Shown one piece after another: positions 7,509 through 19,897 of a stretch of 64,000 nt of DNA. A program made the translations under genes and the position numbers. Each line of letters begins with the position of its first letter. The stretch's first letter is position 1. The notes below the pieces were generated by a model. It worked only from the letters and a program-made list of their open reading frames with translations, searched no databases and was not told the origin of the DNA. The DNA is taken from sequence record MK327931.1; one strand, 5' to 3'.

Positions 7509-7517
7509 CAAATATTT

Positions 7518-7926: not shown

Positions 7927-7943
7927 AAGCTGTACTCCTTATA

Positions 7944-8156
7944 TTAATCTTTCAGCCAATGATCTTGAATGAATTTTTCACCGTATCCCTGTTTCATGGA
8001 TTCTAACAGGCGTTCGCGGTGAGCGGCGGCATATTGCTCAGTACTATGCGTTACGCCAGGCTGATAACGTGATACCCCATCCGGTCCGATGTATTGTACA
8101 TCCCACGGTTTTTCGTTAGTATCAGACCATTTACGAACGATTAGTTGACCTTGCAT
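7944..8156 (-). CDS. hypothetical early protein (70 aa)
   Basis: GAGG SD; promoter cassette. Confidence 0.8.
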   Translation of the reverse strand: MQGQLIVRKWSDTNEKPWDVQYIGPDGVSRYQPGVTHSTEQYAAAHRERLLESMKQGYGEKFIQDHWLKD

Positions 8157-8239
8157 TTTTCTTTCCTCTCAGTGGGGAGAATCATTTCTCCCCTTCATGT
8201 AACTTATTATACAGTACTAGATTATCTTGTCAATAGTTT

Positions 8240-8563
8240 TTATTCACCTTGTTTGAATTTAGTTTTCTCCATTGATTCCATGATTGCAACCAATACGCTG
8301 TGGATCTCGCTTAACGCGGAATCACTGAAAGCATTAATGAATAGTCGATCATTCTCGCGAATATTTTTAATGTACTTTTCAGCAGTAGTTGCGAATTCAT
8401 TCAACGGTAGATCAAATGCTTTATCCCATGATGGATGGCGTAATTGTAACAGTACTGGATTATCACGATCACCAGGGGAAAACGTACCAGTGATGAAACA
8501 TACGCCCGGAATACTTTCGAACTGGCAACGGACTTCCTTTGTGATAGTAGTATGAATGTACAT
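8240..8563 (-). CDS. hypothetical early protein (107 aa)
   Basis: GAGGA SD. Confidence 0.8.
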   Translation of the reverse strand: MYIHTTITKEVRCQFESIPGVCFITGTFSPGDRDNPVLLQLRHPSWDKAFDLPLNEFATTAEKYIKNIRENDRLFINAFSDSALSEIHSVLVAIMESMEKTKFKQGE

Positions 8564-8590
8564 TTATTGTTATCCTCTATTAAATTAATA

Positions 8591-8779
8591 TTACAGTTTA
8601 TGAATCAATTCTTTATCTAAGCGATAGCGTACATTATTAATAGTAACGGCATTGTTTTTAATGCTACGCTGTACAGGTCCACCAGCAATAACAAATGTTG
8701 CTTTATTACCCCGAACAATGATAGCACTTCCAGGATTACCGAAATCATCTTGTACTAAAATACTTGATAAGTTTTCCAT
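8591..8779 (-). CDS. hypothetical early protein (62 aa)
   Basis: GAGG SD; promoter cassette. Confidence 0.75.
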   Translation of the reverse strand: MENLSSILVQDDFGNPGSAIIVRGNKATFVIAGGPVQRSIKNNAVTINNVRYRLDKELIHKL

Positions 8780-8860
8780 TTTCATTTCCTCTTAGTAGGG
8801 GAAGATGTTTCCCCTTGATGTAAGTACTATAACACTACTGGATAGTACTGTCAATACTTT

Positions 8861-9118
8861 TTATCTCATAGATCTATGCCAACAATTACGCGGGGGACGT
8901 TTAAAAGTACTATCATGATCCTCCTGGCAAGTTATGCAGTACTTACATCCCTTAACAGCCTGGCGGCGATTCTCAGGGATTTTATCGCCACAGTCGAGGC
9001 AATGTATCAGTGATTCTATTTGTGCGTTAATTTGCTTTCTAGCGTGGTTTACGGCGGCCTGAATCACTGCGTTAATCTCGTCTTGTTCGGCCCCGTCTTT
9101 CGCGAATCCTACAGCCAT
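8861..9118 (-). CDS. TraR/DksA C4-type zinc-finger protein, YbiI-like
   Basis: MAVGFAKDGAEQDEI..., CLDCGDKIPENRRQAVKGCKYCITCQ matches the YbiI/TraR pattern. Confidence 0.9.
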   Translation of the reverse strand: MAVGFAKDGAEQDEINAVIQAAVNHARKQINAQIESLIHCLDCGDKIPENRRQAVKGCKYCITCQEDHDSTFKRPPRNCWHRSMR

Positions 9119-9315
9119 TATTTTAACCTTTTTCTATCATTAATTAATGCTTTCAGTACTATACTAATAACTTGCAATGATTCATCAATGACTATAAAAT
9201 TATTTTCTTTCATTAGATGATAGTTACCATTGATATTATATTCTAACGAGTACTGTTTACGTTTAATTTTTGATAATGTTTCTATTTGTTTTTGTACTGA
9301 TTTCATGCTAATCAT
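9118..9315 (-). CDS. hypothetical basic protein (65 aa)
   Basis: ORF track; TAATG coupling. Confidence 0.7.
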   Translation of the reverse strand: MISMKSVQKQIETLSKIKRKQYSLEYNINGNYHLMKENNFIVIDESLQVISIVLKALINDRKRLK

Positions 9316-9384
9316 TGTTAAACGTCCTGTAACGCATTCTAACGAGATAAACGGTTTAGTACTGGCATTGTATAGGGTAATGAA

Positions 9385-9415
9385 TTAAAGCCCACCAGCG
9401 TTAACCAGTGGGCTA
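9385..9415 (-). terminator. intrinsic terminator-like hairpin containing a Chi site
   Basis: agcccac..gtgggct stem followed by T-run on minus strand; CCACCAGC at 9392. Confidence 0.6.
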
Positions 9416-9420
9416 TAATC

Positions 9421-9564
9421 TTACATCTTGCGGATAATCTTAACAGTATCTTTCACCGATTTACCGTCTTGCTGGCATTGCTCGATCATTGCGTATTGTT
9501 CTGCGGTCAGATCCTCGCCAGTTTTTGCCAGTACTGCGTCGATGAATGAATCCAGTGCGATCAT
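9421..9564 (-). CDS. small hypothetical protein (47 aa), paralogue of 13303-13455
   Basis: read by hand; GKSVKDTVKII vs GKTINETASII. Confidence 0.7.
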   Translation of the reverse strand: MIALDSFIDAVLAKTGEDLTAEQYAMIEQCQQDGKSVKDTVKIIRKM

Positions 9565-9663
9565 TTTATTTCTCTCTTAGGTTAAGTTAACTACTGTTTA
9601 TAAAACTTATTATACAGTACTATCAAACGTTGTCAATATATTTAATAGTACTGGTAATATATT

Positions 9664-9843
9664 TTAGCGGTAATCGTCGTATGCTTTATTCACCTGGCGA
9701 ATGTAACTTTCAAAGGCTTCGTCTACCGTTTCATACTCCCGAACATAATCACCATAGGAAACTACATACATACCTTTTTGATCTTCAAACGTCATGATGA
9801 TAGAATCCAGACCAACGATTTCAGTTTTTGCGATGATAGCCAT
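9664..9843 (-). CDS. small hypothetical protein (59 aa, MAIIAKTE)
   Basis: read by hand; AAGGA SD and promoter. Confidence 0.75.
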   Translation of the reverse strand: MAIIAKTEIVGLDSIIMTFEDQKGMYVVSYGDYVREYETVDEAFESYIRQVNKAYDDYR

Positions 9844-9936
9844 TTTTTTAATTCCTTAGTAGTGTAGTTGATAAAACTTATTATGCCAGTACTATCAATC
9901 ATTGTCAATAGCTTTGATAGTACTGTGATAATATTT

Positions 9937-10149
9937 TTAGTTAATGATAGTCAGTGTAAAATTGTAATCACCACAGCGATATAGCACGTTATTCCCAAAT
10001 GTTCCAACTAATCGCACATCACACAAAACGCCGGTTTTTTCTTTTACTTCCTTGATACTTGTAACTCCTGTAATATCTTTATTAAAGTATTCATGATCTG
10101 AAAATAAAACTTGTTTTGCATTTTTTAATTTCGACCGGATATTAGCCAT
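9937..10149 (-). CDS. hypothetical early protein (70 aa)
   Basis: GAGAG SD; promoter cassette. Confidence 0.8.
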   Translation of the reverse strand: MANIRSKLKNAKQVLFSDHEYFNKDITGVTSIKEVKEKTGVLCDVRLVGTFGNNVLYRCGDYNFTLTIIN

Positions 10150-10244
10150 TTTGTTTTCTCTCTGTTAGTGGGGAGAAGTTTTTCTCCCCTTGATGTAAAC
10201 TATTATACAGTACTATAATCTATTGTCAAACTATTTTTTTTATA

Positions 10245-10586
10245 TTATTCGAAATCTTCTGGACCGGACTGATAATCATCTTCACCGTATGCACTTTCTA
10301 ACTTCTCGCCAGTGTGGTCATCAGTTAGTGAGTCATCCTCATAGTTCACGTCTACGCCAGTGATGTAAAACTGGCTATCGTCTGGATCATTGAAATTAAT
10401 TTTCTGTATGTTTACAATAACTGTATTGATGCCCAGGACACCGCCATCAGCCGTTACAAAGTACTGATATTTTTCACAACCGCCTGAATTGAAACCGTAA
10501 TTAATTTCGGCCCGACCATCATTTAAACGCAGTGCCTGAGCGATGATTTCATTTTCAAAGTTAGATTGAGCAATTGAGATAGTCAT
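10245..10586 (-). CDS. acidic conserved phage hypothetical protein (113 aa)
   Basis: DGGVL...NYED..L.DH....ESAYGE pattern; promoter cassette. Confidence 0.8.
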   Translation of the reverse strand: MTISIAQSNFENEIIAQALRLNDGRAEINYGFNSGGCEKYQYFVTADGGVLGINTVIVNIQKINFNDPDDSQFYITGVDVNYEDDSLTDDHTGEKLESAYGEDDYQSGPEDFE

Positions 10587-10707
10587 GATTTGTTTCCTTA
10601 TTACCAGGGGAAACCGTTTCCCCTTTCGATGTAAAACATTATACGCTTATTGAGATAGTTTGCAAGTACTTTTTAAAAATAGTTTTCAGTACTCAAACAT
10701 TATACAA

Positions 10708-10797
10708 TAGATACACTCCTGCACCCTGTGGGCTAGTGAGCTATCTCTCAATGAATATATAATAGCAAAATGGCTGACCGAAGTCAACCACTTTTTT
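10708..10797 (-). ncRNA. two-hairpin RNA module, family A copy 4
   Basis: TTGACT-17-TATTAT; TGAG-AGATAG-CTCA; GCCCACAGGGTGCA-GGAG-TGTATCT. Confidence 0.6.
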
Positions 10798-10934
10798 CAT
10801 TTATTTTTAGCTTTTAGAATCGCCGCCTTTCGTGTCATTCCTTGTTTGATGTACTCCTTTACTTTCGCTTTTTTAGCGTTTACCTTGTCTGCTTTCGTTT
10901 TAGGAGTACTGTAAATTATACCGTTAGGATTCAT
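10797..10934 (-). CDS. small very basic protein (45 aa)
   Basis: read by hand; MNPNGIIYSTPKTKADKVNAKKAK... Confidence 0.65.
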   Translation of the reverse strand: MNPNGIIYSTPKTKADKVNAKKAKVKEYIKQGMTRKAAILKAKNK

Positions 10935-11024
10935 TTAAATCACCATAAAGAATAGATAGGTTACTAACAACGCCGCGATCAATGCACCGACCAGGGCCGA
11001 ACTATAGTAAGCTAATGTTTTCAT
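10935..11024 (-). CDS. small hydrophobic peptide (29 aa)
   Basis: read by hand; coupled to neighbours. Confidence 0.55.
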   Translation of the reverse strand: MKTLAYYSSALVGALIAALLVTYLFFMVI

Positions 11025-11173
11025 TTTTTAGCCTGAAAATAATGTTTAATTTGTGCGGCGGTCAATGCACAATTACGCAGGAAGTTTTCTGTATAACTGC
11101 GGCGAGTACTGAAAGAGAATTGACCTTTGCCGTTGCCGATAGTAACATCAAACCGAGCGTTGTATTGTTTCAT
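11021..11173 (-). CDS. small hypothetical protein (50 aa, MKQYNARF)
   Basis: read by hand; AAGGAG SD; promoter cassette. Confidence 0.75.
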   Translation of the reverse strand: MKQYNARFDVTIGNGKGQFSFSTRRSYTENFLRNCALTAAQIKHYFQAKK

Positions 11174-11257
11174 TTTGATTCTCCTTGTATCAGGGGAGAA
11201 CCATTTCCCCCCCCTCTATGTAAACAATTATACAGTACTGGAAACTAATTGCAAGTA

Positions 11258-11404
11258 CTATTTTTTAGATTTACGCAAACTTTCTACCATCTCAGGAGTA
11301 AGGCCCGGCGGGTAGGAAACCACTTCATCCACAAAACGCAAAGGGAATACCCCAGCGAAAGGTGAACGTGCTTTCTTGTTAGTACTCTTTTTTGATGCTT
11401 TCAT
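11258..11404 (-). CDS. small basic protein (48 aa)
   Basis: read by hand; AAGGA SD; promoter cassette. Confidence 0.65.
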   Translation of the reverse strand: MKASKKSTNKKARSPFAGVFPLRFVDEVVSYPPGLTPEMVESLRKSKK

Positions 11405-11473
11405 TTCATATTCCTTAATTAGTGGGGAGAATCATTTCTCCCCTTCATGTAAAACATTATACAGTACTGAAAA

Positions 11474-11683
11474 CTAATTGCAAGTACTATTTGAAAGTAA
11501 ATGCTCATACGCTGCATTAACTACGTTTTCAATAACCGACTGTACAGAAAGATCCCCCACGTCCCGGCTATAGTAGAAATCGCTTACAGTGGTGTCATCG
11601 TATGCAAATACTTTACCAGGTACGGCATCAATCACATACATATTAACCTTTAAGATGTCGATCTTATCCTGTACAGTAAGCAT
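11474..11683 (-). CDS. hypothetical early protein (69 aa)
   Basis: ORF track; AAGG SD. Confidence 0.75.
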   Translation of the reverse strand: MLTVQDKIDILKVNMYVIDAVPGKVFAYDDTTVSDFYYSRDVGDLSVQSVIENVVNAAYEHLLSNSTCN

Positions 11684-11688
11684 ATTAA

Positions 11689-11961
11689 TTAACCTTTTAA
11701 GTACTGGCTTAAGTAGTCTTGTTGATCTTCGGTGATTGCAGCCATCTTCCCTAGTACTGGATTGATGATATAATCCCCTGTAACGTCCTGTAACGCATTC
11801 TCAGGCGGTTTAACGGCTGGGGTAGCCATAGCCATTGCCTGGACTTGTTCGACGCTGTAACGCTCATAAAGGCGGCATTCTTCCGGTGTTAACATAGCAT
11901 CAGTACGCTTCATCGGTTTAATGATGCTTTCGATCTCATTCAGTACTTGATTAACGTTCAT
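11689..11961 (-). CDS. hypothetical early protein (90 aa)
   Basis: ORF track; GGGA SD. Confidence 0.75.
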   Translation of the reverse strand: MNVNQVLNEIESIIKPMKRTDAMLTPEECRLYERYSVEQVQAMAMATPAVKPPENALQDVTGDYIINPVLGKMAAITEDQQDYLSQYLKG

Positions 11962-12012
11962 GGTATAATCCCCAATATAAGCGGCCTGAATCGACCGCTA
12001 ACGATGTTTTGA

Positions 12013-12282
12013 TTAATAGGTGTATGGTTGACGTTCAAACAATGATTGCACGTTGTACGCCCCACTAATGGGCTTTGCTGGTAAATCAATTTTATATTGT
12101 TCACGCTTAAAGATAATAAAACGGCAATTGTTTTTTACATCAAAATTGATTGAACGTTCCAGGAGTTTTCCATCGTGTACAAATACAAGATAACCGCTTG
12201 CTACTTGTTTTGTAGTACTGGTTGCAACCATAGACCGACGAACATGCGTACCTGCATCGATTAAAGTACTGATATTTTTCAT
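12013..12282 (-). CDS. hypothetical early protein (89 aa)
   Basis: GAGGA SD; own promoter. Confidence 0.8.
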   Translation of the reverse strand: MKNISTLIDAGTHVRRSMVATSTTKQVASGYLVFVHDGKLLERSINFDVKNNCRFIIFKREQYKIDLPAKPISGAYNVQSLFERQPYTY

Positions 12283-12362
12283 TATACGATCCTCTTAAGT
12301 TAATTTAATTTCTTTCCCCTATGCAGACACTATATCAAAGTATCTGCATAAAGTAAAGCTAA

Positions 12363-12686
12363 TTAAAGATCTTTTTTGCGTTTAACATTCTGTACAGTAC
12401 AATGCAACGGGATATTAAGATCATTGCACACACGAGTAAGGGAGGTTTCATCAGTATTAAGCCCGTCTACTGATTCCTTTAAGAGAGATAACGCCGTTTG
12501 TTGATATGCATCTTCATAGCCATAAGTAAATGATTCAACCGCCAGATCATTCAAACCGTTATCCAGTTCAACGCTTACATGACAAGAATGATAAGTATTG
12601 CCATATGAATCAGTCCAACGTTTACCGTCAACATTGATTGCACGGATTGCAGCCAGGGAAACGGTGTTAATGATAGTTTTAGCCAT
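12363..12686 (-). CDS. hypothetical early protein, paralogue of 6245-6568
   Basis: shared RWTD..GNTYHSC motif. Confidence 0.85.
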   Translation of the reverse strand: MAKTIINTVSLAAIRAINVDGKRWTDSYGNTYHSCHVSVELDNGLNDLAVESFTYGYEDAYQQTALSLLKESVDGLNTDETSLTRVCNDLNIPLHCTVQNVKRKKDL

Positions 12687-12775
12687 TTTTGTATTCCTTA
12701 AATTAATATGTTGTCTTGATAAAATCTATTATGCCAGTACTATCAAACTATGTCAATAGTACTGTGATAATATTT

Positions 12776-12919
12776 TTACTTACTTTTTGCTTTCTTTGCT
12801 GCTTCCACCTGGTCGGCCCATTCTTTACCCCATACTTGTAAATTATAATGGTACTGGCAAAGAGCAACGCCCCGCTTTAAACCCGTAATAGATTTCTGAC
12901 CACATTGACAAGTTTTCAT
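12776..12919 (-). CDS. small putative Zn-binding protein (47 aa; CxC...CxxH)
   Basis: read by hand; AAGGA SD; promoter cassette. Confidence 0.7.
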   Translation of the reverse strand: MKTCQCGQKSITGLKRGVALCQYHYNLQVWGKEWADQVEAAKKAKSK

Positions 12920-13005
12920 TTTAGTTTCCTTGTAGTGGGGAGAACCATTTCTCCCCTTGATGTAATGTATTATACTTTATTCGATTTACTTTGCAAGTAC
13001 TTTTT

Positions 13006-13233
13006 TTAATTTAATTCATCCAGGCAAAGGATACGCTCAACGCCCAAATCAGTTAAACTAATCGACGGCACTTGATAGGTTTCAATGTATGCTACACTTG
13101 CCCACTGACCGAACTCATTAACGGCCCAGGTATTCATTGCATTTTGCAATTCCGCACCTTCCTTGTTGGTAATTACAGCAACAGTAGAAGAATTACCAGT
13201 AGTACCAGATACGCGAGTGATTACGATAGCCAT
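13006..13233 (-). CDS. hypothetical early protein (75 aa)
   Basis: AGGA SD; own promoter. Confidence 0.8.
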   Translation of the reverse strand: MAIVITRVSGTTGNSSTVAVITNKEGAELQNAMNTWAVNEFGQWASVAYIETYQVPSISLTDLGVERILCLDELN

Positions 13234-13302
13234 TTTTTAATTCCTATTCAGTAGTTGATGTATGTATTATGTCAGTACTTAAAACTATTGTCAAACTATT
13301 TT

Positions 13303-13455
13303 TTAAAGTTTATCAATGATTGATGCCGTTTCATTGATAGTCTTGCCGTGTTTTGCACACGCGATAACTGCTTTAAATTCCTTTGATGACCAATCTTTCT
13401 TGCTGCATACTGACATTACTTGTAAAGTAAAACAATCCAGTTCATAAGTATTCAT
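13303..13455 (-). CDS. small hypothetical protein (50 aa), paralogue of 9421-9564
   Basis: read by hand; GAGGA SD. Confidence 0.7.
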   Translation of the reverse strand: MNTYELDCFTLQVMSVCSKKDWSSKEFKAVIACAKHGKTINETASIIDKL

Positions 13456-13669
13456 CTTTAAATCCTCAGTTAGTTAAGGTGTCTCGCCTTGATGTAATTA
13501 ATTATACGCTAATCTCTTAATCGTGCAAGTACTTTTTATTACTTTTTGCAAAATACTTTAAACGCTCTCAATCGCATTCTAACGACCTTAACTCCACCAG
13601 CTAGGGCGATGTATCAGATAATCAGTTTAATGCGTTAGGCGGTGCTAGTGGACTGGAATACTATAGACA

Positions 13670-13711
13670 CAAAAAAGCCCACTGTTTAAGGTGGGCTAGT
13701 GATTCAGTACT
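13670..13711 (-). terminator. intrinsic terminator, identical to 14406-14447
   Basis: agcccac-cttaaaca-gtgggct plus T6 on minus strand; 42-bp exact duplicate. Confidence 0.85.
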
Positions 13712-13718
13712 TTAATTT

Positions 13719-14201
13719 TTATGCTTCAACTTTGCGATGAGCTTCGATCCATTCCTCGCGAGTCATACCGCTTTCTTTGATAGCGTCCAGTACTACCGCA
13801 ATGCAGTTACCGCGTACAGGAATCAAATGTTCTTCCCCGTTATCAAGTACTACCGCTACACGTTCCTGAATCCATTTTTTAGGCTTAGATTCCGGCTTAT
13901 CTTCACCATACTTAACCGCCAGGGCTTTATGTGCCATTTCCACAACCACTTCCAGATCCAATCCAGACACTGCCGCCTGAATACTTTCAATTGTTGCTTG
14001 TAGTTCTGCTTCACGGGCTTTTTTCTGTTCTTCCAGTTCTGCTACCTTTTTGGCTTGCAGTTCTTTCGCAGTACTGTACGCAATGTTAAAATTGTTGCGT
14101 ACCGCTTTCATGGTATCGCTATCCAGTTCAGCCAGGATTTCTGCCGCTACGTTAGTTTCATTTGCTACCAGTGCTTTGATGAATGATTTTACATTAGCCA
14201 T
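13719..14201 (-). CDS. H-NS/StpA-like protein (160 aa) with divergent DNA-binding loop
   Basis: coiled coil plus GLDLEVVV; C-terminal VLDNGEEHLIPVRGNCIAVVLDAIKESGMTREEWI aligns by eye to H-NS [35 protein letters not shown]. Confidence 0.6.
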   Translation of the reverse strand: MANVKSFIKALVANETNVAAEILAELDSDTMKAVRNNFNIAYSTAKELQAKKVAELEEQKKAREAELQATIESIQAAVSGLDLEVVVEMAHKALAVKYGEDKPESKPKKWIQERVAVVLDNGEEHLIPVRGNCIAVVLDAIKESGMTREEWIEAHRKVEA

Positions 14202-14263
14202 TTTATAAATCCTCAATTAAAGTTTAGTTTACGTTAGATAGTGTATCAAAGTTTTCTCGACGT

Positions 14264-14352
14264 GTCCAGTTTTTCGTTCGACTTACTGGCGGTCTACTTA
14301 GTGCTCCCCGTCTTGATGTAATACATTCTACGCTTTTCTGTGGTAATGTCAA
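14264..14352 (-). promoter_or_regulatory. sigma70 promoter and structured 5' leader (family B RNA motif) of the H-NS-like gene
   Basis: TTGACA-17-TAGAAT; ACATCAAGACGGGGA..TAAGTAG..CCAGT-AAGTCGAACGAAAA-ACTGG. Confidence 0.65.
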
Positions 14353-14405
14353 CTACTTTTTTAAAACTATTTTTAAAGTATCTCAGTACTACGATACTAC
14401 AAAAA

Positions 14406-14447
14406 CAAAAAAGCCCACTGTTTAAGGTGGGCTAGTGATTCAGTACT
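14406..14447 (-). terminator. intrinsic terminator, identical to 13670-13711
   Basis: exact 42-bp duplicate. Confidence 0.85.
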
Positions 14448-14450
14448 AGA

Positions 14451-14750
14451 TTATAAACAGTTAATTACTCCGGTGTGCGTTACTTTCTCAGTATCCATAA
14501 CCGTGACCGATCCACGCTTAGTACTGGCATCATAATAAATTGTGGTGCTACCGTTTTCGTCTTCTTCATGGAACGGGCCGTTTTTAAATGCTTCCGGCTG
14601 GATCTCTAAATCCTTTAATACAATCTCGCCAGTTCTTTCATCGGTCATTGCAACAGTGCACTGAATGAATTTTTCATTACTTACATCTAATGACGCATTA
14701 ACAGCGAAAGAGGAAACAGATAAAGCCAGGGCGATGATTGCAATTTTCAT
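14451..14750 (-). CDS. putative exported protein (99 aa)
   Basis: signal peptide MKIAIIALALSVSSFAVNA. Confidence 0.8.
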   Translation of the reverse strand: MKIAIIALALSVSSFAVNASLDVSNEKFIQCTVAMTDERTGEIVLKDLEIQPEAFKNGPFHEEDENGSTTIYYDASTKRGSVTVMDTEKVTHTGVINCL

Positions 14751-14834
14751 TTGATTATCCTTAGTTACCAGGGGGAACCGCTCCCCCTTGCTATGTAAAA
14801 TATTATACAGTACTAAAAACTAATTGCAAGTACT

Positions 14835-15071
14835 TTATGATTTTTTATAAAACATTTCGGCAGTGATATTTTTACCCGTTGGCTGTACTTTATCCAGAAT
14901 TTTTTGATGCCCTGGCCGTCCAAATGAATATGATCCGTAAACCGTAAACCAGTAGTTACCCTCAGTGTTTACATGTACAGCACAATAGGGAACGCCCCGC
15001 GATTCATCACTAGTAAAGTGTGCTACCGTTCCCGTTACATTCGAAGTCGTTGATTTGATTTGTTCAAGCAT
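14835..15071 (-). CDS. hypothetical early protein (78 aa)
   Basis: AAGGA SD; promoter cassette. Confidence 0.8.
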   Translation of the reverse strand: MLEQIKSTTSNVTGTVAHFTSDESRGVPYCAVHVNTEGNYWFTVYGSYSFGRPGHQKILDKVQPTGKNITAEMFYKKS

Positions 15072-15178
15072 TTTCTTATTCCTTAGTTACCAGGGGAACC
15101 GCTCCCCTATGCAAAACATTATACGCGTTTAAAAACTAATAGCAAGTATTTTAATAAAAAGTATTTGGAAAATAATTG

Positions 15179-15260
15179 TTGACAAGTGCATCCAGTACTG
15201 GCATAATTACTACATCAAGACGAAACAGTCACTAACCCACCGGGTGCATAGATCCGTCTA
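15179..15260 (+). ncRNA. two-hairpin RNA module, family A copy 5 (plus strand)
   Basis: TTGACA-17-CATAAT; GAC-GAAACA-GTC; CCCACCGGGTGCA-TAGA-TCCGTCT; no ORF downstream. Confidence 0.55.
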
Positions 15261-15313
15261 TTAAATGATTCAGTACTGAAAAAGTAACGGGGAGTTATTA
15301 TCTCCCCGCGTTG

Positions 15314-15535
15314 TTATTTTGTAAGGTATAAACAGAAGTCACCTTTATTTGCTACGCCGCCAGTGTAACGCGATGAATAGTTAGAAATATCTTGTACTTC
15401 TGCTATTACCAGTGTATCATCATTCATTTCGTCGCAGAAGCAAACGGCTGGATCTTTTACGCCGATATTGTCGGCATGTTCCCGCATAGATTTAACCAGT
15501 GCTTCCAGTTGAGAAAGAGTAGTGATATTAGCCAT
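15314..15535 (-). CDS. hypothetical early protein (73 aa)
   Basis: start moved to ATG after GAGGA. Confidence 0.8.
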   Translation of the reverse strand: MANITTLSQLEALVKSMREHADNIGVKDPAVCFCDEMNDDTLVIAEVQDISNYSSRYTGGVANKGDFCLYLTK

Positions 15536-15621
15536 TGTATTTTCCTCATTACCAGGGAGAACCATTTCTCCCCTCTATGTAAACTATTATACAGTACTGA
15601 AAACTAATTGCAAGTACTTTT

Positions 15622-15825
15622 TTAATTTAATTGCTTTAAAACATACTCAAAGACACCACGCACATCATTGATCATCGCCTGGCGGTTAGCAGGTAACGCA
15701 TCAGGATCGCCACTATCCCAGGCATTGATAAAACTCCCCAAATCATGATAGATTTTATTCTGTAAGCCGATTAACTGTAATTCTTTTTCTTCAAGCTCTT
15801 TGATGCGGTCGATTAAATCACTCAT
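15622..15825 (-). CDS. hypothetical early protein (67 aa)
   Basis: start moved to ATG after ACTGAGGATTATCTA, the same leader as the upstream gene. Confidence 0.75.
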   Translation of the reverse strand: MSDLIDRIKELEEKELQLIGLQNKIYHDLGSFINAWDSGDPDALPANRQAMINDVRGVFEYVLKQLN

Positions 15826-15842
15826 TAGATAATCCTCAGTAC

Positions 15843-16127
15843 TTAACTGTAAGATCCGCAACGGTCGCAGTAGTGCCCGTCCTCGTCATCGTCAACGAAT
15901 TGACCGACGAAATGATCTACTTTCGCTTTCAGGTTATTATAATCGTTTTCTACTTCATTTAAACGCTTCTGGTAGTATTCCAGTGCTTTAAGATATGCCG
16001 CATCAGCAGTTTTCTCCTGCATAGCTAAATTCATGCCACGCGTTTCATCGTACAGCCAAAAACCATCGGTGCACTGGCTAATAGATAATGACTTGCTTAG
16101 TACTGTATAGTTAATTACTTTACCCAT
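15843..16127 (-). CDS. hypothetical protein, coiled coil plus C-terminal CxxC (94 aa)
   Basis: GAGGA SD; YCDRCG end. Confidence 0.8.
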   Translation of the reverse strand: MGKVINYTVLSKSLSISQCTDGFWLYDETRGMNLAMQEKTADAAYLKALEYYQKRLNEVENDYNNLKAKVDHFVGQFVDDDEDGHYCDRCGSYS

Positions 16128-16219
16128 TAGATAATCCTCAGTAAAGGCGGGAACTATTCCCCGCCTCGATATAAAGTATTATACGTTAATCTAACTACAA
16201 TGCAAGTACTTTTTAAATT

Positions 16220-16486
16220 TTATAATCCTTTTACTGCATCAGGTGCGACTACTCCATCAATGTATTGAACATCGTTTTCAACTTCACGGGCGGCATCATT
16301 CAGCAGATCAAAATTAAATTCCATTTCTTCCAGATCATCGAAATCAGGCTCATAACCATTAATTGTTGAATAAGTCCAAGTACCTTTTTCATAAGTTACG
16401 ACACTTACATCAGGGAAGAAATCTTGCACATGATCCATCGCATCCCGAACCAATTGATGTGCAGTTGTGATATTTAAAGTTTTCAT
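16220..16486 (-). CDS. hypothetical acidic early protein (88 aa)
   Basis: promoter cassette; D/E rich. Confidence 0.8.
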   Translation of the reverse strand: MKTLNITTAHQLVRDAMDHVQDFFPDVSVVTYEKGTWTYSTINGYEPDFDDLEEMEFNFDLLNDAAREVENDVQYIDGVVAPDAVKGL

Positions 16487-16579
16487 TTTGTTGCCCTTTT
16501 AGTGTGAGCGGGGAACCACTCCCCGCCTCGATGTAAAGTATTATACGCTTTTAAACTTAGTTTGCAAGTACTTTTTAAA

Positions 16580-17191
16580 TTAATATGCGATTGATTCTAC
16601 TACGTCATCAATAACATTGAATTGATATTCGTTACCCTCAATCAGTGCCGTAATGTTTTCAGTAGTGAATTGATCCTCATATGCATTCTCTAAATCACGG
16701 TACAACTTGCGGGATAATTCACGAATAGTTTCAGTGAGTAGTTCCTCAAGCTCATTAACTAACGTTTCTTGTTTTGCGGTTAAATCAGTGTAAGCCGATT
16801 CAATGTACCCGCTTACAGTATTCTCATGCGAGTAGTGGGAGTGAGAACGCTTTACACTCATCGCCAAATCATCTTCATTCAGCAGGTGACGGATTGAGCG
16901 ATACTTAGTTAATGCTCTTACCTTGCGTAAAAACTTCACTGCGTCAACGTGGTCAGTACTGATTGATGCACCGTCACCCTGGGACCAAAAACCACTGAAT
17001 TGTATTTCAGCTTCATTAATGCCATATTCCGGTAGTACTGTTTCTTTATAGTATTCAATTTCACTTTCAGAAAAATAATTGTCGTTTGAGTTTTTTTCAC
17101 GTTCCCGAACCAGTTCGATAGCTGACGTTTTTTGTTCTGCGTTCAATTCAGAAAAATCCATAACGAAAGTAGTAGTAGTGATAGTTTTCAT
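16580..17191 (-). CDS. conserved phage hypothetical acidic protein (203 aa; FSGFWSQGDGA motif)
   Basis: ORF track; GAGG SD; own promoter. Confidence 0.85.
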   Translation of the reverse strand: MKTITTTTFVMDFSELNAEQKTSAIELVREREKNSNDNYFSESEIEYYKETVLPEYGINEAEIQFSGFWSQGDGASISTDHVDAVKFLRKVRALTKYRSIRHLLNEDDLAMSVKRSHSHYSHENTVSGYIESAYTDLTAKQETLVNELEELLTETIRELSRKLYRDLENAYEDQFTTENITALIEGNEYQFNVIDDVVESIAY

Positions 17192-17259
17192 TTTGTAACC
17201 CTCATTCAGTAGTTGATGTAAGTATTATACGCTTTTAAAAACATTTGTCAAACTATTTT

Positions 17260-17369
17260 ATCAGGGGAGTTTTTCGTGTGCCTTACTCCTGGGCTACTTA
17301 ACGGGAAGTTACTTATTTCGTTCCCCGTCCTGATGTAAAACATTATACGCCTTTAAACATAGTTTGCAA
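17260..17369 (-). ncRNA. promoter-driven 75-nt structured RNA, family B copy 2
   Basis: near-identical to 7272-7346; TAAC/GTTA stem with variable loop; GGAGT-AAGGCACACGAAAA-ACTCC. Confidence 0.6.
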
Positions 17370-17414
17370 GTACTTTTTAAAAATAGTTTTCAGTACTGAA
17401 TATTTAAAAAAGTA

Positions 17415-17488
17415 TTGACAGCATTATCAAGTACTGGCATAATATACCCCATGACAACAGCTAACCCACCGGGTGCACAATTGTAACT
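17415..17488 (+). ncRNA. two-hairpin RNA module, family A copy 6 (plus strand)
   Basis: TTGACA-17-CATAAT; CCCACCGGGTGCA-CAAT-TGTAACT. Confidence 0.55.
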
Positions 17489-17508
17489 ATACTAAACTAC
17501 TTTTTCTA

Positions 17509-17587
17509 TAGATACACTCCCGCACCCTATGGGCTACGGCTTATCTGCCAATGAATACATTATGCCAGTACTGACAAAATAAGTCAA
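17509..17587 (-). ncRNA. two-hairpin RNA module, family A copy 7, convergent with copy 6
   Basis: TTGACT-17-CATAAT; GGC-AGATAA-GCC; GCCCATAGGGTGCG-GGAG-TGTATCT. Confidence 0.6.
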
Positions 17588-17617
17588 TACCGGCAATTGT
17601 AAAGATTTGTAAACTGC

Positions 17618-17848
17618 TTATACTGCAATCGCGTCCAGGCTATAATAATAATAAGTGCCGTATTGGTGTACTTTATTACCTTTTATTTCAGTACTGAATG
17701 AATCCGAACGGTTTGCATATGATGTTAATTTAAAGTACTTTGATTTGCTGATACGTTGCCATACACCGCAGATCCGCTGTAAGTAAGTAGTTTTATTCGT
17801 GGTAGTATCTTTTACAGTTTTAACTTCAGTCATATACATATTAGTCAT
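17618..17848 (-). CDS. hypothetical early protein (76 aa)
   Basis: GGAG SD; promoter cassette. Confidence 0.8.
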   Translation of the reverse strand: MTNMYMTEVKTVKDTTTNKTTYLQRICGVWQRISKSKYFKLTSYANRSDSFSTEIKGNKVHQYGTYYYYSLDAIAV

Positions 17849-17935
17849 TTTTATTACTCCAGGTTATAGGCGGGAAGAGTTCCCGCTCTCGATGTAAAAC
17901 ATTATACGCCATTAAACATAGTTTGCAAGTACTTT

Positions 17936-18202
17936 TTATTCAAGTACTGCAATCTTTTTAGTACGGTACACGGTCACGCGGTTGCCCTTTCGGTCGAGCT
18001 TTATTTCTACCACTCGACGCGATACACTATCAGGACTTTTCAACGCCGCTAACCAGTACTGTAATGATCTGGCGGTACTACGCTTTATAATGGCCCAACG
18101 TTTACCACGTTCCGATTGTACGCCCATATCTTTAAACGTTGCCCCGTCCTGGCGTGCGGCGATCCGAGCTTGTTCACGCGTCGCAAAATACTTAATATTC
18201 AT
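17936..18202 (-). CDS. hypothetical early protein, paralogue of 5754-6149
   Basis: shared motifs; start at MNIKYF. Confidence 0.8.
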   Translation of the reverse strand: MNIKYFATREQARIAARQDGATFKDMGVQSERGKRWAIIKRSTARSLQYWLAALKSPDSVSRRVVEIKLDRKGNRVTVYRTKKIAVLE

Positions 18203-18287
18203 GCTGTTGCCCTTATCGTTGGTGTATGAATAAAACACTATTATAAAGTACTATCGCAAAAAATGATAGTACTTTAAATAAATTCTA

Positions 18288-18527
18288 TTACATTCCAACC
18301 ATTGCAGCACGGATCGCAGTAGTGCTATATTTGAATCCGTCCGGCGTTTTATCTTGTCCAGTCTGTTCTAAAAATAACATCATATGACGGGCCGCATCAT
18401 TACGATTAGTATTGGCGGCAATAAAGTCCTGGGCCAACCGGTATAATGATTCATCGTTATTAATCCAAAGGCTTACATTCCAATGAGTTTTGTTTTTGTG
18501 ACCTAAGAACATTTTTGATTTAGCCAT
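18288..18527 (-). CDS. conserved phage hypothetical protein (79 aa; THWNVSLWINND motif)
   Basis: start moved to ATG after GAGGA. Confidence 0.8.
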   Translation of the reverse strand: MAKSKMFLGHKNKTHWNVSLWINNDESLYRLAQDFIAANTNRNDAARHMMLFLEQTGQDKTPDGFKYSTTAIRAAMVGM

Positions 18528-18620
18528 TTTTTTAATCCTCTTATATAGTGGGGAACTATTCCCCACCTGATGTAAAACATTATACGCTTTTAAACATAGT
18601 TTGCAAGTACTTTATTAAAC

Positions 18621-18983
18621 TTATTCGTAAATTTTGCCACTGTCAGCCCATACCAGGAAACGAGGCATATTATCCCATGCATCTTGTTTTAAATTTAAAC
18701 CGTGTAATACTTCTGTACTTTCCATTCCTGGTACTGGTTTACTATACACCGCGAAATTTTCGCCCATATACTGATAAACCATCGTCAAATCACTGGCGAT
18801 CATCTTATGGATCATCGCATCAAGCATCACGGTAGCGGCGTATTGTTCACGCTTAAGCGGCAACATTGTAATAAGTTCCCGATAAGCTGAAATGTGAATT
18901 TTTACCGTTTCAGCCGGAAGACCTTTCATCTCTTCACGGAAGTTGACCAGGTTAGAAATAATTTTATTGATTTGGGTCGCCAT
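18621..18983 (-). CDS. hypothetical early protein (120 aa)
   Basis: start moved to MATQIN; first promoter cassette of the zone at 19007-19072. Confidence 0.75.
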   Translation of the reverse strand: MATQINKIISNLVNFREEMKGLPAETVKIHISAYRELITMLPLKREQYAATVMLDAMIHKMIASDLTMVYQYMGENFAVYSKPVPGMESTEVLHGLNLKQDAWDNMPRFLVWADSGKIYE

Positions 18984-19302
18984 CGTATTAATCTCTTTTA
19001 AAGTGTAGCGGGAAGTGTTCCCGCTCTCGATGTAAAACATTATACGCCTTTAAACATAGTTTGCAAGTACTTTCTACATGTACTTTTAAAATAGTTTTCT
19101 TTCTATATAGGGGAACTATCATTCAGTACTATTATTCAGTACTGAATCAACCAAATCACTACTACACCCCATAAAACGGCCTCAGACGCATTCTAACGCA
19201 TTAATACACCTAAGCTATACATTTGCACCATTCCAATCATTCCAGGGCTTTACGGGCCGTTTAAACGCGTTAAATTATTTTCAATTATTTTGTTTTTAGC
19301 TA

Positions 19303-19382
19303 TTGACTCAGTACAGAAAAAGCGTATAATTACTACATAGACGCGAGAAAGCGGAAACCCCAGAGGGTGCGGAATTACGCCC
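19303..19382 (+). ncRNA. two-hairpin RNA module, family A copy 8
   Basis: TTGACT-16-TATAAT; CGC-GAGAAA-GCG; CCCAGAGGGTGCG-GAAT-TACGCCC. Confidence 0.55.
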
Positions 19383-19402
19383 AAAATTCAAGATATAAAA
19401 AA

Positions 19403-19485
19403 AGGATACACTCCCGCACCCTAGCAGGTAAACGCACTTTCTCAGTACTGAAATATAGTACCATAGTCCGGCCCAGGATAGCAAG
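19403..19485 (-). ncRNA. degenerate family A copy 9, convergent with copy 8
   Basis: GGGTGCG-GGAG-TGTATCC hairpin; weak promoter upstream. Confidence 0.4.
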
Positions 19486-19518
19486 CAAATTAATTAAAAC
19501 TTTTTTGCTTCCAGGGTA

Positions 19519-19598
19519 TTGCTTTATTTTTTCAGTACTGTATAATAGTTCCATCAAGTCGAGAAAGACTCAAGCCCACCGGGTGCATAGTTACGCCC
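19519..19598 (+). ncRNA. two-hairpin RNA module, family A copy 10
   Basis: TTGCTT-16-TATAAT; GTC-GAGAAA-GAC; GCCCACCGGGTGCA-TAGT-TACGCCC. Confidence 0.55.
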
Positions 19599-19643
19599 AA
19601 AATTCAGTACTGAAAAAATTTTTAAAAATATCCGTCCAGGCCG

Positions 19644-19675
19644 TTGACATTGCCCCCAGTTTATAAGATAATGAT
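19644..19675 (+). promoter_or_regulatory. rightward sigma70 promoter with no downstream ORF
   Basis: TTGACA-17-GATAAT. Confidence 0.6.
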
Positions 19676-19769
19676 TCCAGATTCAGAAAAATCTAACTCC
19701 AGATACTGCGGGGAAACTATCCCCACGCGGTAGGGGAACTATTGGAAAAAACAAAATAAAATTTTGATT

Positions 19770-19897
19770 TAGCCGTCTATACTTCCAGACGTGTAACCAT
19801 CTAGCCGTTTAGCCGTCCAAACGTCTAGCCATCCAGAAATCTAGCCGTCTAGATGGATAGCCATCTTTACTTCCAGACTTCTGGAGGGCTAGACATA
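19770..19897. repeat. degenerate 8-bp-period tandem array (TAGCCRTC / CARACGTC units)
   Basis: TAGCCRT at 19770, 19802, 19810, 19826, 19842, 19858, all multiples of 8 apart. Confidence 0.85.

What the first reader, a model, noticed from the sequence alone, without database searches (positions are those of the whole stretch)
13719..14201. Early H-NS-like protein with a rewritten DNA-binding loop
Seen: a long coiled coil, a GLDLEVVV block (compare H-NS GIDPNELL), a K/P linker, and a C-domain aligning by eye to the H-NS DNA-binding domain. The TWTGQGRTP minor-groove motif is replaced by LIPVRGNCI. Established: H-NS silences AT-rich foreign DNA, and phages counter it (T7 gp5.5, T4 Arn). Inference: this is either a dominant-negative partner that poisons H-NS/StpA filaments or a re-targeted phage nucleoid protein. 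In the second case it is a candidate reader of the AGTACT palindrome.
Basis: inference. Interest (0 to 1): 0.66.

Follow-up and report, generated by a model that had tools for sequence, protein, structure and literature searches.

The report
Divergent H-NS-like early phage protein
A jumbo coliphage carries, in its terminal repeat, an early gene for a very divergent full-length relative of the bacterial DNA-silencing protein H-NS. Its DNA-contact loop reads Arg-Gly-Asn instead of Gln-Gly-Arg, so it probably binds AT-rich DNA, but this is untested.

Summary
The window is bases 1-64000 of Escherichia phage vB_EcoM_G17 (Asteriusvirus, 371 kb). The finding is gene G17_00042 (13719-14201, minus strand, 160 aa), annotated 'hypothetical protein'.

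**Homology to H-NS is supported:**
- My family profile aligns collinearly with an H-NS family profile over both domains (hhalign 93%, P=2.5e-7). That is about as far apart as H-NS and MvaT. Reversed and shuffled controls fail.
- HMM searches in both directions pick each other's family out of decoys.
- The C-domain folds as beta-beta-alpha-alpha. Its best solved matches are the H-NS, MvaT and Ler DNA-binding domains, with low scores.
- The curated Pfam models for H-NS and MvaT do not match.

**The loop is altered, not erased.** R130-G131-N132 sits on H-NS Q112-G113-R114. Gly-Asn is invariant in all 25 family members, and Asn is what MvaT uses at that position.

**Context.** The gene is a single transcription unit with a near-consensus sigma-70 promoter, inside the direct terminal repeat. 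Orthologs lie near one end of the record (five of six fetched), three of them in an annotated terminal repeat.

[quoted passage not shown] Poisoning of host H-NS could not be tested. A role as AGTACT reader is not supported. The ortholog in Klebsiella phage Muenster already carries a GenBank note of an HHpred hit to StpA. I rate this a new variant of a known kind.

The parts
13719..14201 (-). CDS G17_00042, 160 aa plus stop; a divergent full-length H-NS-superfamily protein
   Evidence: ORF and translation. GenBank annotation 'hypothetical protein'. PHROG 27871, function unknown, E=8.5e-87. hhalign against the H-NS family: 93.4%, P=2.5e-7.
13911..14201 (-). Residues 1-97: N-terminal helical domain (helices 2-12, 16-25, 28-77, 83-97), aligned to the H-NS oligomerisation domain
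   Evidence: AF2 model with pLDDT 70-81 in this part. hhalign N-domain against N-domain: P=2.3e-4. Two family members give sub-threshold hits to Pfam Histone_HNS_N, best 21.5 bits against a cut-off of 24.5.
13950..13964 (-). Residues 80-84, GLDLE: the turn between the long helix and helix 4. G80 aligns to H-NS G69 of GIDPNELL
   Evidence: G80 is invariant in 25/25 family members. Alignment.
13863..13910 (-). Residues 98-113: linker with K and P, net charge 0
   Evidence: pLDDT below 50. Charge table: linker 0, against +5 in E. coli H-NS.
13734..13862 (-). Residues 114-156: C-terminal domain, beta1 114-118, beta2 124-128, alpha1 135-144, alpha2 148-155
   Evidence: AF2 model of residues 93-160, core pLDDT 83-87. 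Foldseek rank 1 is the H-NS CTD 2L93. VIA-align rank 1 is the MvaT CTD 2MXF, Z 3.3, rmsd 2.8 A over 44 of 47 residues; the Ler CTD 2LEV scores Z 2.1.
13806..13814 (-). Codons CGC GGT AAC = R130-G131-N132: the loop between beta2 and alpha1, aligned to H-NS Q112-G113-R114
   Evidence: Read from the sequence. BLASTP and hhalign put it in this register. G131 and N132 are invariant in 25/25 members; position 130 varies (R, S, T, K, N, H).
14210..14214 (-). Ribosome-binding site GAGGA, 8 nt before the ATG
   Evidence: Read from the sequence.
14325..14352 (-). Sigma-70-type promoter TTGACA-16 nt-TAGAAT (11 of 12). It is one copy of the repeated early-promoter module of this region
   Evidence: Promoter scan. 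Repeat family D2, copy at 14306-14368.
13676..13697 (-). Intrinsic terminator just after the gene. An identical stem-loop at 14412-14433 ends the gene upstream, so the gene is a single transcription unit
   Evidence: Terminator scan. GenBank regulatory features. Repeat family D4.

Best explanation
G17_00042 is a divergent but complete member of the H-NS superfamily. It has an N-terminal helical, coiled-coil oligomerisation domain, a flexible linker, and a small beta-beta-alpha-alpha DNA-binding domain.

It is probably transcribed by host RNA polymerase soon after the phage DNA enters the cell. The evidence for that is a near-consensus sigma-70 promoter and a position in the terminal repeat.

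[quoted passage not shown] This would be a hybrid of two known modes:
- the Q/R-G-R hook of H-NS, from which it keeps the first arm and the Gly;
- the Gly-Asn half-hook of MvaT, which supplies the last arm.

On a 36% G+C phage genome that depends on sigma-70 promoters early, the likeliest role is a phage-owned nucleoid protein. It would occupy AT-rich phage DNA in place of, or in competition with, host H-NS/StpA, much as the counter-silencer Ler does.

Shown here: homology, architecture, predicted fold, loop conservation, and the promoter, terminator and repeat context. Inferred: DNA binding, oligomerisation and the biological role.
For: **Homology**
- hhalign of the 25-member family against 30 diverse H-NS proteins: 93.4%, P=2.5e-7, collinear over residues 15-154 on H-NS 10-136. 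The 16-member version gives 87.6%.
- Controls: reversed H-NS scores 22.3, column shuffles reach at most 16.3.
- Benchmark: H-NS against MvaT gives 94.2%, score 47.4.
- The family HMM ranks H-NS ORFs 1-12 among 631 decoy ORFs, best E=1.7e-5. The reciprocal search agrees.
- Independent support: the GenBank note on the Muenster ortholog reads 'HHpred hit to NP_417155.1 97.2%', which is StpA.
- The nearest named cluster in the ESM Atlas is H-NS, score 0.75, a lead only.

**Fold**
- Helices 2-12, 16-25, 28-77 and 83-97, then a disordered linker, then beta-beta-alpha-alpha.
- Foldseek rank 1 of 350,542 chains is the H-NS CTD 2L93.
- VIA-align finds only 4 of 48,161 chains at Z>=2. The top one is the MvaT CTD-DNA complex (Z 3.3, 44 of 47 residues), and Ler CTD is also listed.

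**Loop**
- G131-N132 are invariant in 25/25 members and R114 is kept in 22/25.
- The three members that lack R114 have K-G-N-K and an added Lys-containing insert.
- In MvaT, N100 overlays H-NS R114 and contacts bases (PMC4466236).

**Context**
- Near-consensus promoter, own terminator, and a second identical copy 350,149 bases downstream.
- Five of six orthologs fetched lie within 1-6 kb of a record end, three of them in an annotated terminal repeat; RaK2's lies at 230 kb of its record.
Against: - The curated models do not match. Pfam Histone_HNS and MvaT_DBD find nothing in the whole G17 genome at E<=10. Pfam and NCBIfam scans of the protein give nothing. HMMER profile searches of PDB sequences find no H-NS.
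- The structural scores are low in absolute terms: Foldseek E=0.84 and Z 2.1-3.3. The domain has under 50 residues, so these scores alone prove little.
- In the Asteriusvirus proteins the linker has net charge 0 and the C-domain net -4 (pI 4.6). H-NS has +5 and 0.
- The Lys on helix alpha1 that most other members keep is Leu here.
- The last Arg of the hook, essential in H-NS and Ler, is missing.
- All of this could mean weak or no DNA binding in this genus.
- No binding, oligomerisation or expression data exist.
Confidence: 0.55

Rival explanations
1. Dominant-negative partner. The N-terminal domain co-oligomerises with host H-NS and/or StpA and caps or distorts their filaments. This lifts silencing of the AT-rich phage DNA. 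The C-domain would be secondary.
For: - The N-domain aligns to the H-NS oligomerisation domain.
- Truncated or variant H-NS proteins are known to poison H-NS/StpA (PMC7074111).
- The acidic C-domain and non-basic linker of the Asteriusvirus version would suit a subunit that joins filaments but binds DNA poorly.
- Early expression fits a host take-over function.
Against: - Identity to H-NS is only about 15-18% in the profile alignment.
- Core residues of dimerisation site 2 differ: H-NS Y61 and M64 align to E72 and Q75 (read from the alignment).
- Known antagonists of this kind (H-NST) lack the C-domain. Here the loop Gly-Asn is invariant across genera.
- Relatives occur in phages recorded on Xanthomonas, Erwinia and Pectobacterium, whose H-NS proteins differ.
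- The complex prediction could not be run, so there is no test either way.
Confidence: 0.2
2. Sequence-specific reader of the AGTACT palindrome. The protein would recognise the hexamer that litters the genome and overlaps the -35 element of the early promoters, for example to shut off early transcription.
For: - AGTACT is the commonest hexamer of the window: 282 sites against 20.6 expected.
- It is enriched 6-7 fold across five Rak2-like genomes that all carry the family.
- It overlaps the -35 element of 18 minus-strand early promoters in the first 19 kb.
Against: - These phages share hundreds of genes, so co-occurrence is uninformative.
- H-NS-type domains read the minor groove, which cannot easily tell A:T from T:A or G:C from C:G. 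Yet only the exact word is enriched among 36 W-S-W-W-S-W classes: next highest 94, other palindromes 7-48.
- The loop's first position varies among genera while the word is the same in all of them.
Confidence: 0.07
3. Not a relative of H-NS at all. It would be a coiled-coil protein with a small unrelated C-terminal domain, and the resemblance would come from composition and chance.
For: - The curated Pfam and NCBIfam models and PDB sequence searches are blank.
- Whole-protein fold searches give only generic helical hits.
- The structural scores of the C-domain are below the usual significance levels.
Against: - Both domains match separately and in the same order: P=2.3e-4 and 8.9e-5, and 2.5e-7 together.
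- The reversed control keeps coiled-coil composition and still fails.
- Reciprocal HMM ranking against decoys agrees.
- Two structure searches that do not depend on each other both put an H-NS-superfamily DNA-binding domain first.
- The Muenster annotators reached StpA independently.
Confidence: 0.08

Closest known systems
H-NS / StpA of Enterobacteria (Pfam Histone_HNS_N + Histone_HNS; PDB 3NR7, 2L93, 1HNR, 2LRX)
   Same: - Same order of parts: two short helices, a long helix, a Gly-containing turn (GLDLE against GIDPN), a fourth helix, a linker, then a beta-beta-alpha-alpha domain with the contact loop between beta2 and alpha1.
- Collinear profile match at 93%.
- The H-NS CTD is Foldseek rank 1.
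- The pattern after the loop is alike: V-(L/I)-K-x-A-(M/V)-x3-G-x-(S/T)-x2-(D/E)-(F/W)-(I/L).
   Different: - 160 aa against 137 aa, with about 15-18% identity.
- The curated Pfam models do not match.
- The loop is R-G-N, not Q-G-R. The Trp of TWTG is Ile or Met. The Pro after the loop is kept in only some members.
- The linker is not basic and the C-domain is acidic in this genus.
- It is phage-encoded and lies in a terminal repeat.
MvaT / MvaU of Pseudomonas (Pfam MvaT_DBD; PDB 2MXE, 2MXF)
   Same: - Gly-Asn at the tip of the loop. In MvaT, G99-N100 enter the minor groove and N100 takes the place of H-NS R114 (PMC4466236).
- An Arg upstream of beta1 (R114, kept in 22 of 25 members) could play the part of MvaT R80.
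- The MvaT CTD-DNA complex is the best VIA-align hit: Z 3.3 over 44 of 47 residues.
- It is about as distant from H-NS as MvaT is.
   Different: - There is no significant profile similarity to MvaT itself: 2.5-22%.
- PF22055 does not match.
- The loop is not shortened as in MvaT.
- The lysine network on helix alpha1 is absent in the Asteriusvirus proteins.
- The Gly-Asn is therefore probably convergent.
Ler of attaching-effacing E. coli (H-NS-family counter-silencer; PDB 2LEV)
   Same: - It is an H-NS-family DNA-binding domain with an altered hook (V-G-R) that displaces H-NS from AT-rich DNA rather than silencing it (PMC4466236; PMC7074111).
- The Ler CTD appears in both structure searches.
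- It is the functional model I favour.
   Different: - Ler keeps the last Arg and loses the first arm. This protein does the reverse.
- Per the review's table, Ler resembles H-NS only in its C-terminal part.
- Ler is a chromosomal island gene, not a phage early gene.
Phage- and plasmid-borne full-length H-NS homologs (H-NS of phage EPV1, Sfh of R27, Acr2; review PMC7074111)
   Same: A mobile element carries its own full-length H-NS-type protein. The proposed purposes are to manage silencing of its own AT-rich DNA or to act on host defence genes.
   Different: - Those are close relatives of the host's H-NS and are recognisable by ordinary searches.
- This family is far more divergent. It has no plasmid relatives. 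Among the named phage records listed by two tblastn searches it occurs only in 310-386 kb jumbo phages.
- It has a different loop.
H-NST and other truncated H-NS antagonists; T7 gp5.5, T4 Arn
   Same: They are anti-H-NS functions of mobile elements and phages.
   Different: - H-NST has only the N-terminal domain.
- From my own knowledge, gp5.5 and Arn are unrelated in sequence.
- This protein has a complete C-domain with a conserved loop.

Membership tests
H-NS family | Match to the curated C-terminal model Pfam PF00816 Histone_HNS (cut-off 25.6 bits) | tested here: not met
   There is no hit for the protein at E<=10. There is none in six frames of the whole G17 genome. None of the 16 members hits it.
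H-NS family | Match to the curated N-terminal model Pfam PF22470 Histone_HNS_N (cut-off 24.5 bits) | tested here: not met
   P0001 has no hit. Two of 16 family members hit below the cut-off, best E=2.1e-4 at 21.5 bits.
H-NS family | Detectable homology over both domains, in the same order | tested here: met
   hhalign gives 93.4%, P=2.5e-7, residues 15-154 on H-NS 10-136. The Muenster GenBank note records an HHpred hit to StpA at 97.2%.
H-NS family | Architecture: helical oligomerisation domain (alpha1-alpha2-long alpha3-turn-alpha4), flexible linker, small beta-beta-alpha DNA-binding domain | tested here: met
   The AF2 models show H2-12, H16-25, H28-77, H83-97, a linker below pLDDT 50, then E114-118, E124-128, H135-144, H148-155. 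This is a prediction, not an experiment.
H-NS family | C-domain fold superposes on solved H-NS-type DNA-binding domains | tested here: inconclusive
   The best hits are the right ones: 2L93 at rank 1 and 1HNR at rank 4 by Foldseek; 2MXF at Z 3.3 and 2LEV at Z 2.1 by VIA-align. The scores are below the usual thresholds, with Foldseek E=0.84.
H-NS family | AT-hook-like Q/R-G-R motif in the loop | tested here: not met
   The aligned loop is R130-G131-N132. Gly is kept, and the last Arg is Asn in all 25 members.
H-NS family | Basic linker between the domains | tested here: not met
   The net charge is 0 in P0001 and -1 to +3 across the family. In 30 H-NS proteins it is +2 to +7.
H-NS family | Self-association into dimers and filaments; heteromers with paralogs | not testable with these tools
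H-NS family | Preferential binding to AT-rich DNA through the minor groove | not testable with these tools
   This needs EMSA, ITC, NMR or ChIP.
MvaT family | Match to Pfam PF22055 MvaT_DBD, or profile similarity to MvaT proteins | tested here: not met
   There is no hit in the G17 genome. hhalign against 16 MvaT proteins gives 2.5% and 22%.
MvaT family | AT-pincer: Gly-Asn in loop 2 plus an Arg from the segment before beta1 | tested here: inconclusive
   Gly-Asn is present and invariant. R114 is kept in 22 of 25 members and lies 17 residues before G131; in MvaT, R80 lies 19 residues before G99. The spatial position is not established.
MvaT family | Lysine network on the helix after the loop | tested here: not met
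   Helix 135-144 of P0001 has a single Lys, and the C-domain has net charge -4. Other genera keep one Lys or Arg at the position of residue 138.
Truncated H-NS antagonists (H-NST type) | N-terminal oligomerisation domain only, no DNA-binding domain | tested here: not met
   A complete C-domain is present with invariant loop residues.

The most novel reading that the evidence does not exclude
The Rak2-like jumbo phages would carry their own 'chromatin' protein. It is a third solution for the H-NS hook (R-G-N, first arm as in H-NS and last arm as in MvaT), and it is made at once from both copies of the terminal repeat. It would coat the incoming AT-rich genome so that host H-NS/StpA cannot silence the sigma-70 early promoters. 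Later it might help to close those promoters. It would do this either by itself or together with whatever factor reads the AGTACT words that overlap their -35 elements.
Probability: 0.15. Interest if true: 0.7.

Novelty: new variant of a known kind. Interest (0 to 1): 0.45.

Why it matters
H-NS silences AT-rich incoming DNA, and T7 and T4 are known to neutralise it with unrelated small proteins.

This looks like a different strategy. A whole clade of 310-386 kb phages keeps a very divergent full-length H-NS-type protein in the terminal repeat, behind a host-type promoter. Its loop combines features of two experimentally defined binding modes, H-NS Q/R-G-R and MvaT R...G-N. That makes it a natural test of which parts of the hook are needed for AT-rich recognition.

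It also gives a name and testable hypotheses to a protein family (PHROG 27871) that is 'hypothetical' in nearly all records.

The claim is modest for two reasons. Phage- and plasmid-borne H-NS homologs are known. One GenBank record already notes the HHpred hit to StpA.

Tried and rejected
- **Whole-protein fold searches.** Foldseek against PDB, VIA-align wide and BFVD gave only generic long-helix matches, plus the Yersinia phage ortholog. They were uninformative because the long helix dominates.
- **Sequence searches of PDB.** The single protein and the family profile found no H-NS, MvaT or Ler at E<=10.
- **Family libraries.** NCBIfam was blank. The Pfam sub-threshold hits (DUF3846, KfrA_N, Tox-PL-2, RNase_H, head scaffolding PHROG 206) are inconsistent between members, so I dismissed them.
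- **ESM Atlas.** The C-terminal part gave no usable hit.
- **hhalign against a single H-NS sequence.** It gave only 3.6%. A diverse H-NS alignment was needed.
- **The search for related loci with the family alignment.** It failed for lack of a conserved 7-10 column stretch.
- **Plasmids.** No relatives.
- **Context of a distant member.** It was only a 921-base contig.
- **RNA evidence.** Only assembled contigs from wastewater RNA libraries cover the gene, which does not show transcription. Of 17 listed differences inside the CDS, 12 fall on third codon positions, as expected for a gene under purifying selection.
- **Complex prediction with the H-NS N-domain.** There is no verdict on binding to H-NS.
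- **Literature.** I found no paper linking Rak2-like phages with H-NS, or phages with AGTACT enrichment, in the held library.
Full report
**Where we are.** The window is identical to bases 1-64000 of Escherichia phage vB_EcoM_G17 (MK327931.1, genus Asteriusvirus, 370,817 bp). The finding is gene G17_00042, annotated 'hypothetical protein'. It lies on the minus strand at 13719-14201. The ATG at 14201 is preceded by GAGGA at a spacing of 8 nt, and all relatives start at the same Met. The longer TTG frame listed by the ORF finder is therefore not the start.

- The protein (160 aa) has a long predicted helix at residues 28-77 whose hydrophobic residues follow a 3-4 spacing.
- The block GLDLEVVV sits at residues 80-87.
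- A low-confidence linker with Lys and Pro covers residues 98-113.
- A small C-terminal domain follows (AF2).
LIPVRGNCI lies on TWTGQGRTP.

**Ordinary annotation tools see nothing.**
- Pfam gives no credible hit.
- PHROGs gives family 27871, of unknown function.
- NCBIfam gives nothing.
- PDB sequences give nothing, either for the protein or for a family profile.
- The Pfam models Histone_HNS and MvaT_DBD find nothing in six frames of the whole G17 genome at E<=10.
- By curated thresholds, then, the protein is not a member of either family.

**The family.**
- The word search found only close relatives.
- The exhaustive profile search found 15 representatives, down to about 25% identity and 150-225 aa long.
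- tblastn of the phage collection shows that the gene is present throughout the Rak2-like jumbo phages and their kin. These include Asteriusvirus, Alcyoneusvirus (RaK2, K64-1, Muenster), Mimasvirus (GAP32, CBB) and Eneladusvirus (Yen9-04, Serratia BF, Erwinia pEa_SNUABM). Salmonella Munch/7t3 and a Xanthomonas phage also carry it.
- There are no plasmid relatives and no paralog in G17 beyond the second repeat copy.
- In an alignment of 25 members, the invariant residues are G80, G131 and N132.
- Nearly invariant are D82, K97, R114, V115, G122, R148 and I152.

**Homology to H-NS.** I collected 30 diverse H-NS proteins and 16 MvaT proteins from genomes that match the Pfam models. I extracted them with scripts. 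The comparisons gave:

| Comparison | Probability | P-value | Score |
|---|---|---|---|
| 16-member phage profile vs H-NS profile (15-153 on 10-135) | 87.6% | 3.5e-6 | 40.6 |
| 25-member phage profile vs H-NS profile (15-154 on 10-136) | 93.4% | 2.5e-7 | 46.9 |
| H-NS profile reversed (keeps coiled-coil composition) | 2.6-6.4% | | 19.6 / 22.3 |
| 60 column shuffles of the H-NS alignment | | | 9.6 +/- 2.0, max 16.3 |
| N-domain vs N-domain | | 2.3e-4 | |
| C-domain vs C-domain | | 8.9e-5 | |
| H-NS vs MvaT (accepted distant relatives, as a yardstick) | 94.2% | | 47.4 |
| Phage family vs MvaT | 2.5-22% | | |

- The cross-comparisons, N-domain against C-domain and the reverse, are not significant.
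- In a plain HMM search against 631 six-frame ORFs from the H-NS loci, the 12 best hits of the phage-family HMM are all H-NS genes (best E=1.7e-5).
- The H-NS HMM in turn ranks the phage proteins directly behind the H-NS proteins.
- Independently, the GenBank record of Klebsiella phage Muenster calls its ortholog a 'putative DNA-binding protein' and notes an HHpred hit to NP_417155.1 at 97.2%. That accession is StpA, the H-NS paralog.
- The nearest named cluster in the ESM Atlas is an H-NS cluster, at a score that counts only as a lead.

**Structure.**
- The full-length model (pLDDT 67) gives helices 2-12, 16-25, 28-77 and 83-97, a disordered linker, and a poorly resolved C-domain. Its fold searches return only generic helical matches.
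- Folding residues 93-160 alone, with the family alignment, gives a confident core (pLDDT 83-87). The strands are 114-118 and 124-128, the helices are 135-144 and 148-155, and there is a final bridge.
- This is the beta1-beta2-alpha1-alpha2-(beta3) topology described for the MvaT C-domain, whose fold resembles that of H-NS (PMC4466236).
- Foldseek against 350,542 PDB chains puts the Salmonella H-NS C-domain 2L93 first (E 0.84, rmsd 3.0 A over 38 columns, 29% identity). 1HNR is fourth and the Ler-DNA complex 2LEV is 38th.
- VIA-align against 48,161 representatives, which does not depend on Foldseek, finds only four chains with Z>=2. The first is the MvaT C-domain-DNA complex 2MXF (Z 3.3, rmsd 2.8 A, 44 of 47 residues). 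The third is Ler 2LEV (Z 2.1).
- The absolute scores are weak, as they must be for a domain of fewer than 50 residues. The identity of the top hits is specific.

**The loop.**
- In every alignment R130-G131-N132 falls on H-NS Q112-G113-R114.
- In some members the following residues read G-N-M-P, against G-R-T-P in H-NS. This fixes the register.
- Many H-NS relatives have R-G-R, so Arg at the first position is ordinary.
- The central Gly is kept.
- The last Arg, which enters the minor groove in H-NS and Ler, is Asn in all 25 members.
- That is the MvaT solution. The backbones of G99 and N100 and the N100 side chain hydrogen-bond to bases in the minor groove. N100 overlays H-NS R114. R80, from the segment before beta1, supplies the missing arm (PMC4466236).
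- The family has a nearly invariant Arg (R114) at the start of beta1. The three members that lack it, all Alcyoneusvirus, have K-G-N-K and an added Lys-containing insert. This pattern is what one expects of DNA-contact residues, though that is inference.
- The motif is therefore modified, not erased. Because the family is not otherwise close to MvaT, the Gly-Asn is probably convergent.

**What speaks against strong DNA binding here.**
- In the Asteriusvirus proteins the linker has net charge 0, against +5 in E. coli H-NS.
- The C-domain has net charge -4 (pI 4.6).
- The Lys or Arg that most other members keep on helix alpha1 is Leu.
- Members from other genera are neutral to basic.

**Context.**
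- The gene is a transcription unit of its own. It has a promoter TTGACA-16-TAGAAT (11 of 12) at 14352-14325.
- It has an intrinsic terminator at 13697-13676, and an identical terminator at 14433-14412 closes the gene upstream.
- The promoter is one copy of a repeated module of this region (family D2).
- An identical copy of the locus lies 350,149 bases downstream at 363749-364599. This fits a direct terminal repeat of up to about 20.7 kb, although I compared only 851 bases plus one short second match.
- Most orthologs lie close to one end of their record: GAP32_005, CBB_3 (inside a 22,456-bp repeat), Munch_006, Yen9-04 g001 and Muenster_011 (inside a 20-kb repeat). RaK2_00332 lies at about 230 kb of its record.
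- For CBB, the authors took the RpoD-like promoters and the many short ORFs of this region, including the repeat, as the early region (PMC5259590).
No transcript data could be had, because only assembled contigs from wastewater RNA libraries cover the gene.

**Mechanism.**
- The genome has 36% G+C and relies on sigma-70 promoters early, so it is a natural target of H-NS. A phage protein that occupies the same DNA without silencing it, as Ler does, is the most economical role.
- The dominant-negative reading (0.2) remains open, and the two are not exclusive.
- Against the dominant-negative reading: the invariant loop, the low identity at core positions of dimerisation site 2, and the presence of the family in phages recorded on hosts as different as Xanthomonas, Erwinia and Pectobacterium.

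**The AGTACT idea.**
- The palindrome is real and striking. There are 282 sites in the window against 20.6 expected, and it is the commonest hexamer of all. C is preferred before it and G after it, and it is densest in the first 24 kb.
- It is enriched 6-7 fold in five whole Rak2-like genomes.
- It overlaps the -35 element of 18 minus-strand promoters of the form AGTACTTGCA...GTATAAT in the first 19 kb, against 0.02 expected.
- Among the 36 word classes that look alike from the minor groove (W-S-W-W-S-W), only this exact word is enriched.
- The loop residue before Gly-Asn differs between genera that share the word.
- The gene's own promoter has AGTAGT instead.
Who reads the word remains open.

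**Novelty.**
- Full-length H-NS homologs on phages and plasmids are known: H-NS of EPV1, Sfh and Acr2 (PMC7074111).
- One GenBank note already records the StpA hit.
- What appears to be new, as far as the held literature shows, is threefold:
  - the family is conserved across this whole clade of jumbo phages;
  - its position near the genome end and in the terminal repeat is largely conserved;
  - it has a hybrid R-G-N loop.
- I rate this a new variant of a known kind, of moderate interest.

Noticed in passing
window 1-64000 (e.g. 13706-13711, 13789-13794, 13846-13851, 14070-14075): AGTACT is the commonest hexamer of the window: 282 sites against 20.6 +/- 4.4 expected, with the next hexamer at 154. 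C is preferred before it and G after it (CAGTACTG). It is densest in the first 24 kb. Whole-genome counts are 850-1235 in G17, RaK2, GAP32, CBB and Munch, against 142-187 for the reversed word. Other palindromes of the same W-S-W-W-S-W type are not enriched. I found no paper on this, and what reads the word is unknown.
   Followed up: partly
window 887-19071, minus strand (e.g. 12969-13001, 13501-13533, 14802-14834, 15586-15618): There is a family of 18 near-identical early promoters of the form AGTACTTGCA(A/T)-spacer-GTATAAT, against 0.02 expected. AGTACT overlaps the -35 hexamer. In several copies a second AGTACT sits just before the extended -10 element. An A-tract lies upstream and a G-rich hairpin downstream.
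   Followed up: partly
window 13658-13711 and 14394-14447: A 54-nt terminator module is repeated at 94% identity. On the coding (minus) strand it runs: stop codon, a few bases, AGTACT, then the stem-loop AGCCCACC...GGTGGGCT and a T-run. Genes of this region seem to be built from standard promoter and terminator cassettes.
   Followed up: no
window 13600-14450 = MK327931.1 363749-364599: The locus is duplicated exactly at an offset of 350,149 bases. A second short match (7320-7401 and 357469-357550) has the same offset. The first ~20.7 kb of the window therefore probably lies in a direct terminal repeat, which the G17 feature rows I saw (7000-21000) do not mark.
   Followed up: partly
window 14748-14791, 15069-15112, 15532-15575: A G/C-rich hairpin (CCAGGGGGAACCGCTCCCCC-like) recurs in the 5' leaders of neighbouring small genes, next to their ribosome-binding sites. 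It may be a translational or RNA-stability element.
   Followed up: no
L131 (Klebsiella phage Muenster) 2035-3666: In the same terminal-repeat early region of Muenster, the annotators note a small protein with HHpred hits to RNA polymerase sigma factors and a YeeU-like antitoxin. Both are candidate host take-over functions near the H-NS-like gene.
   Followed up: no
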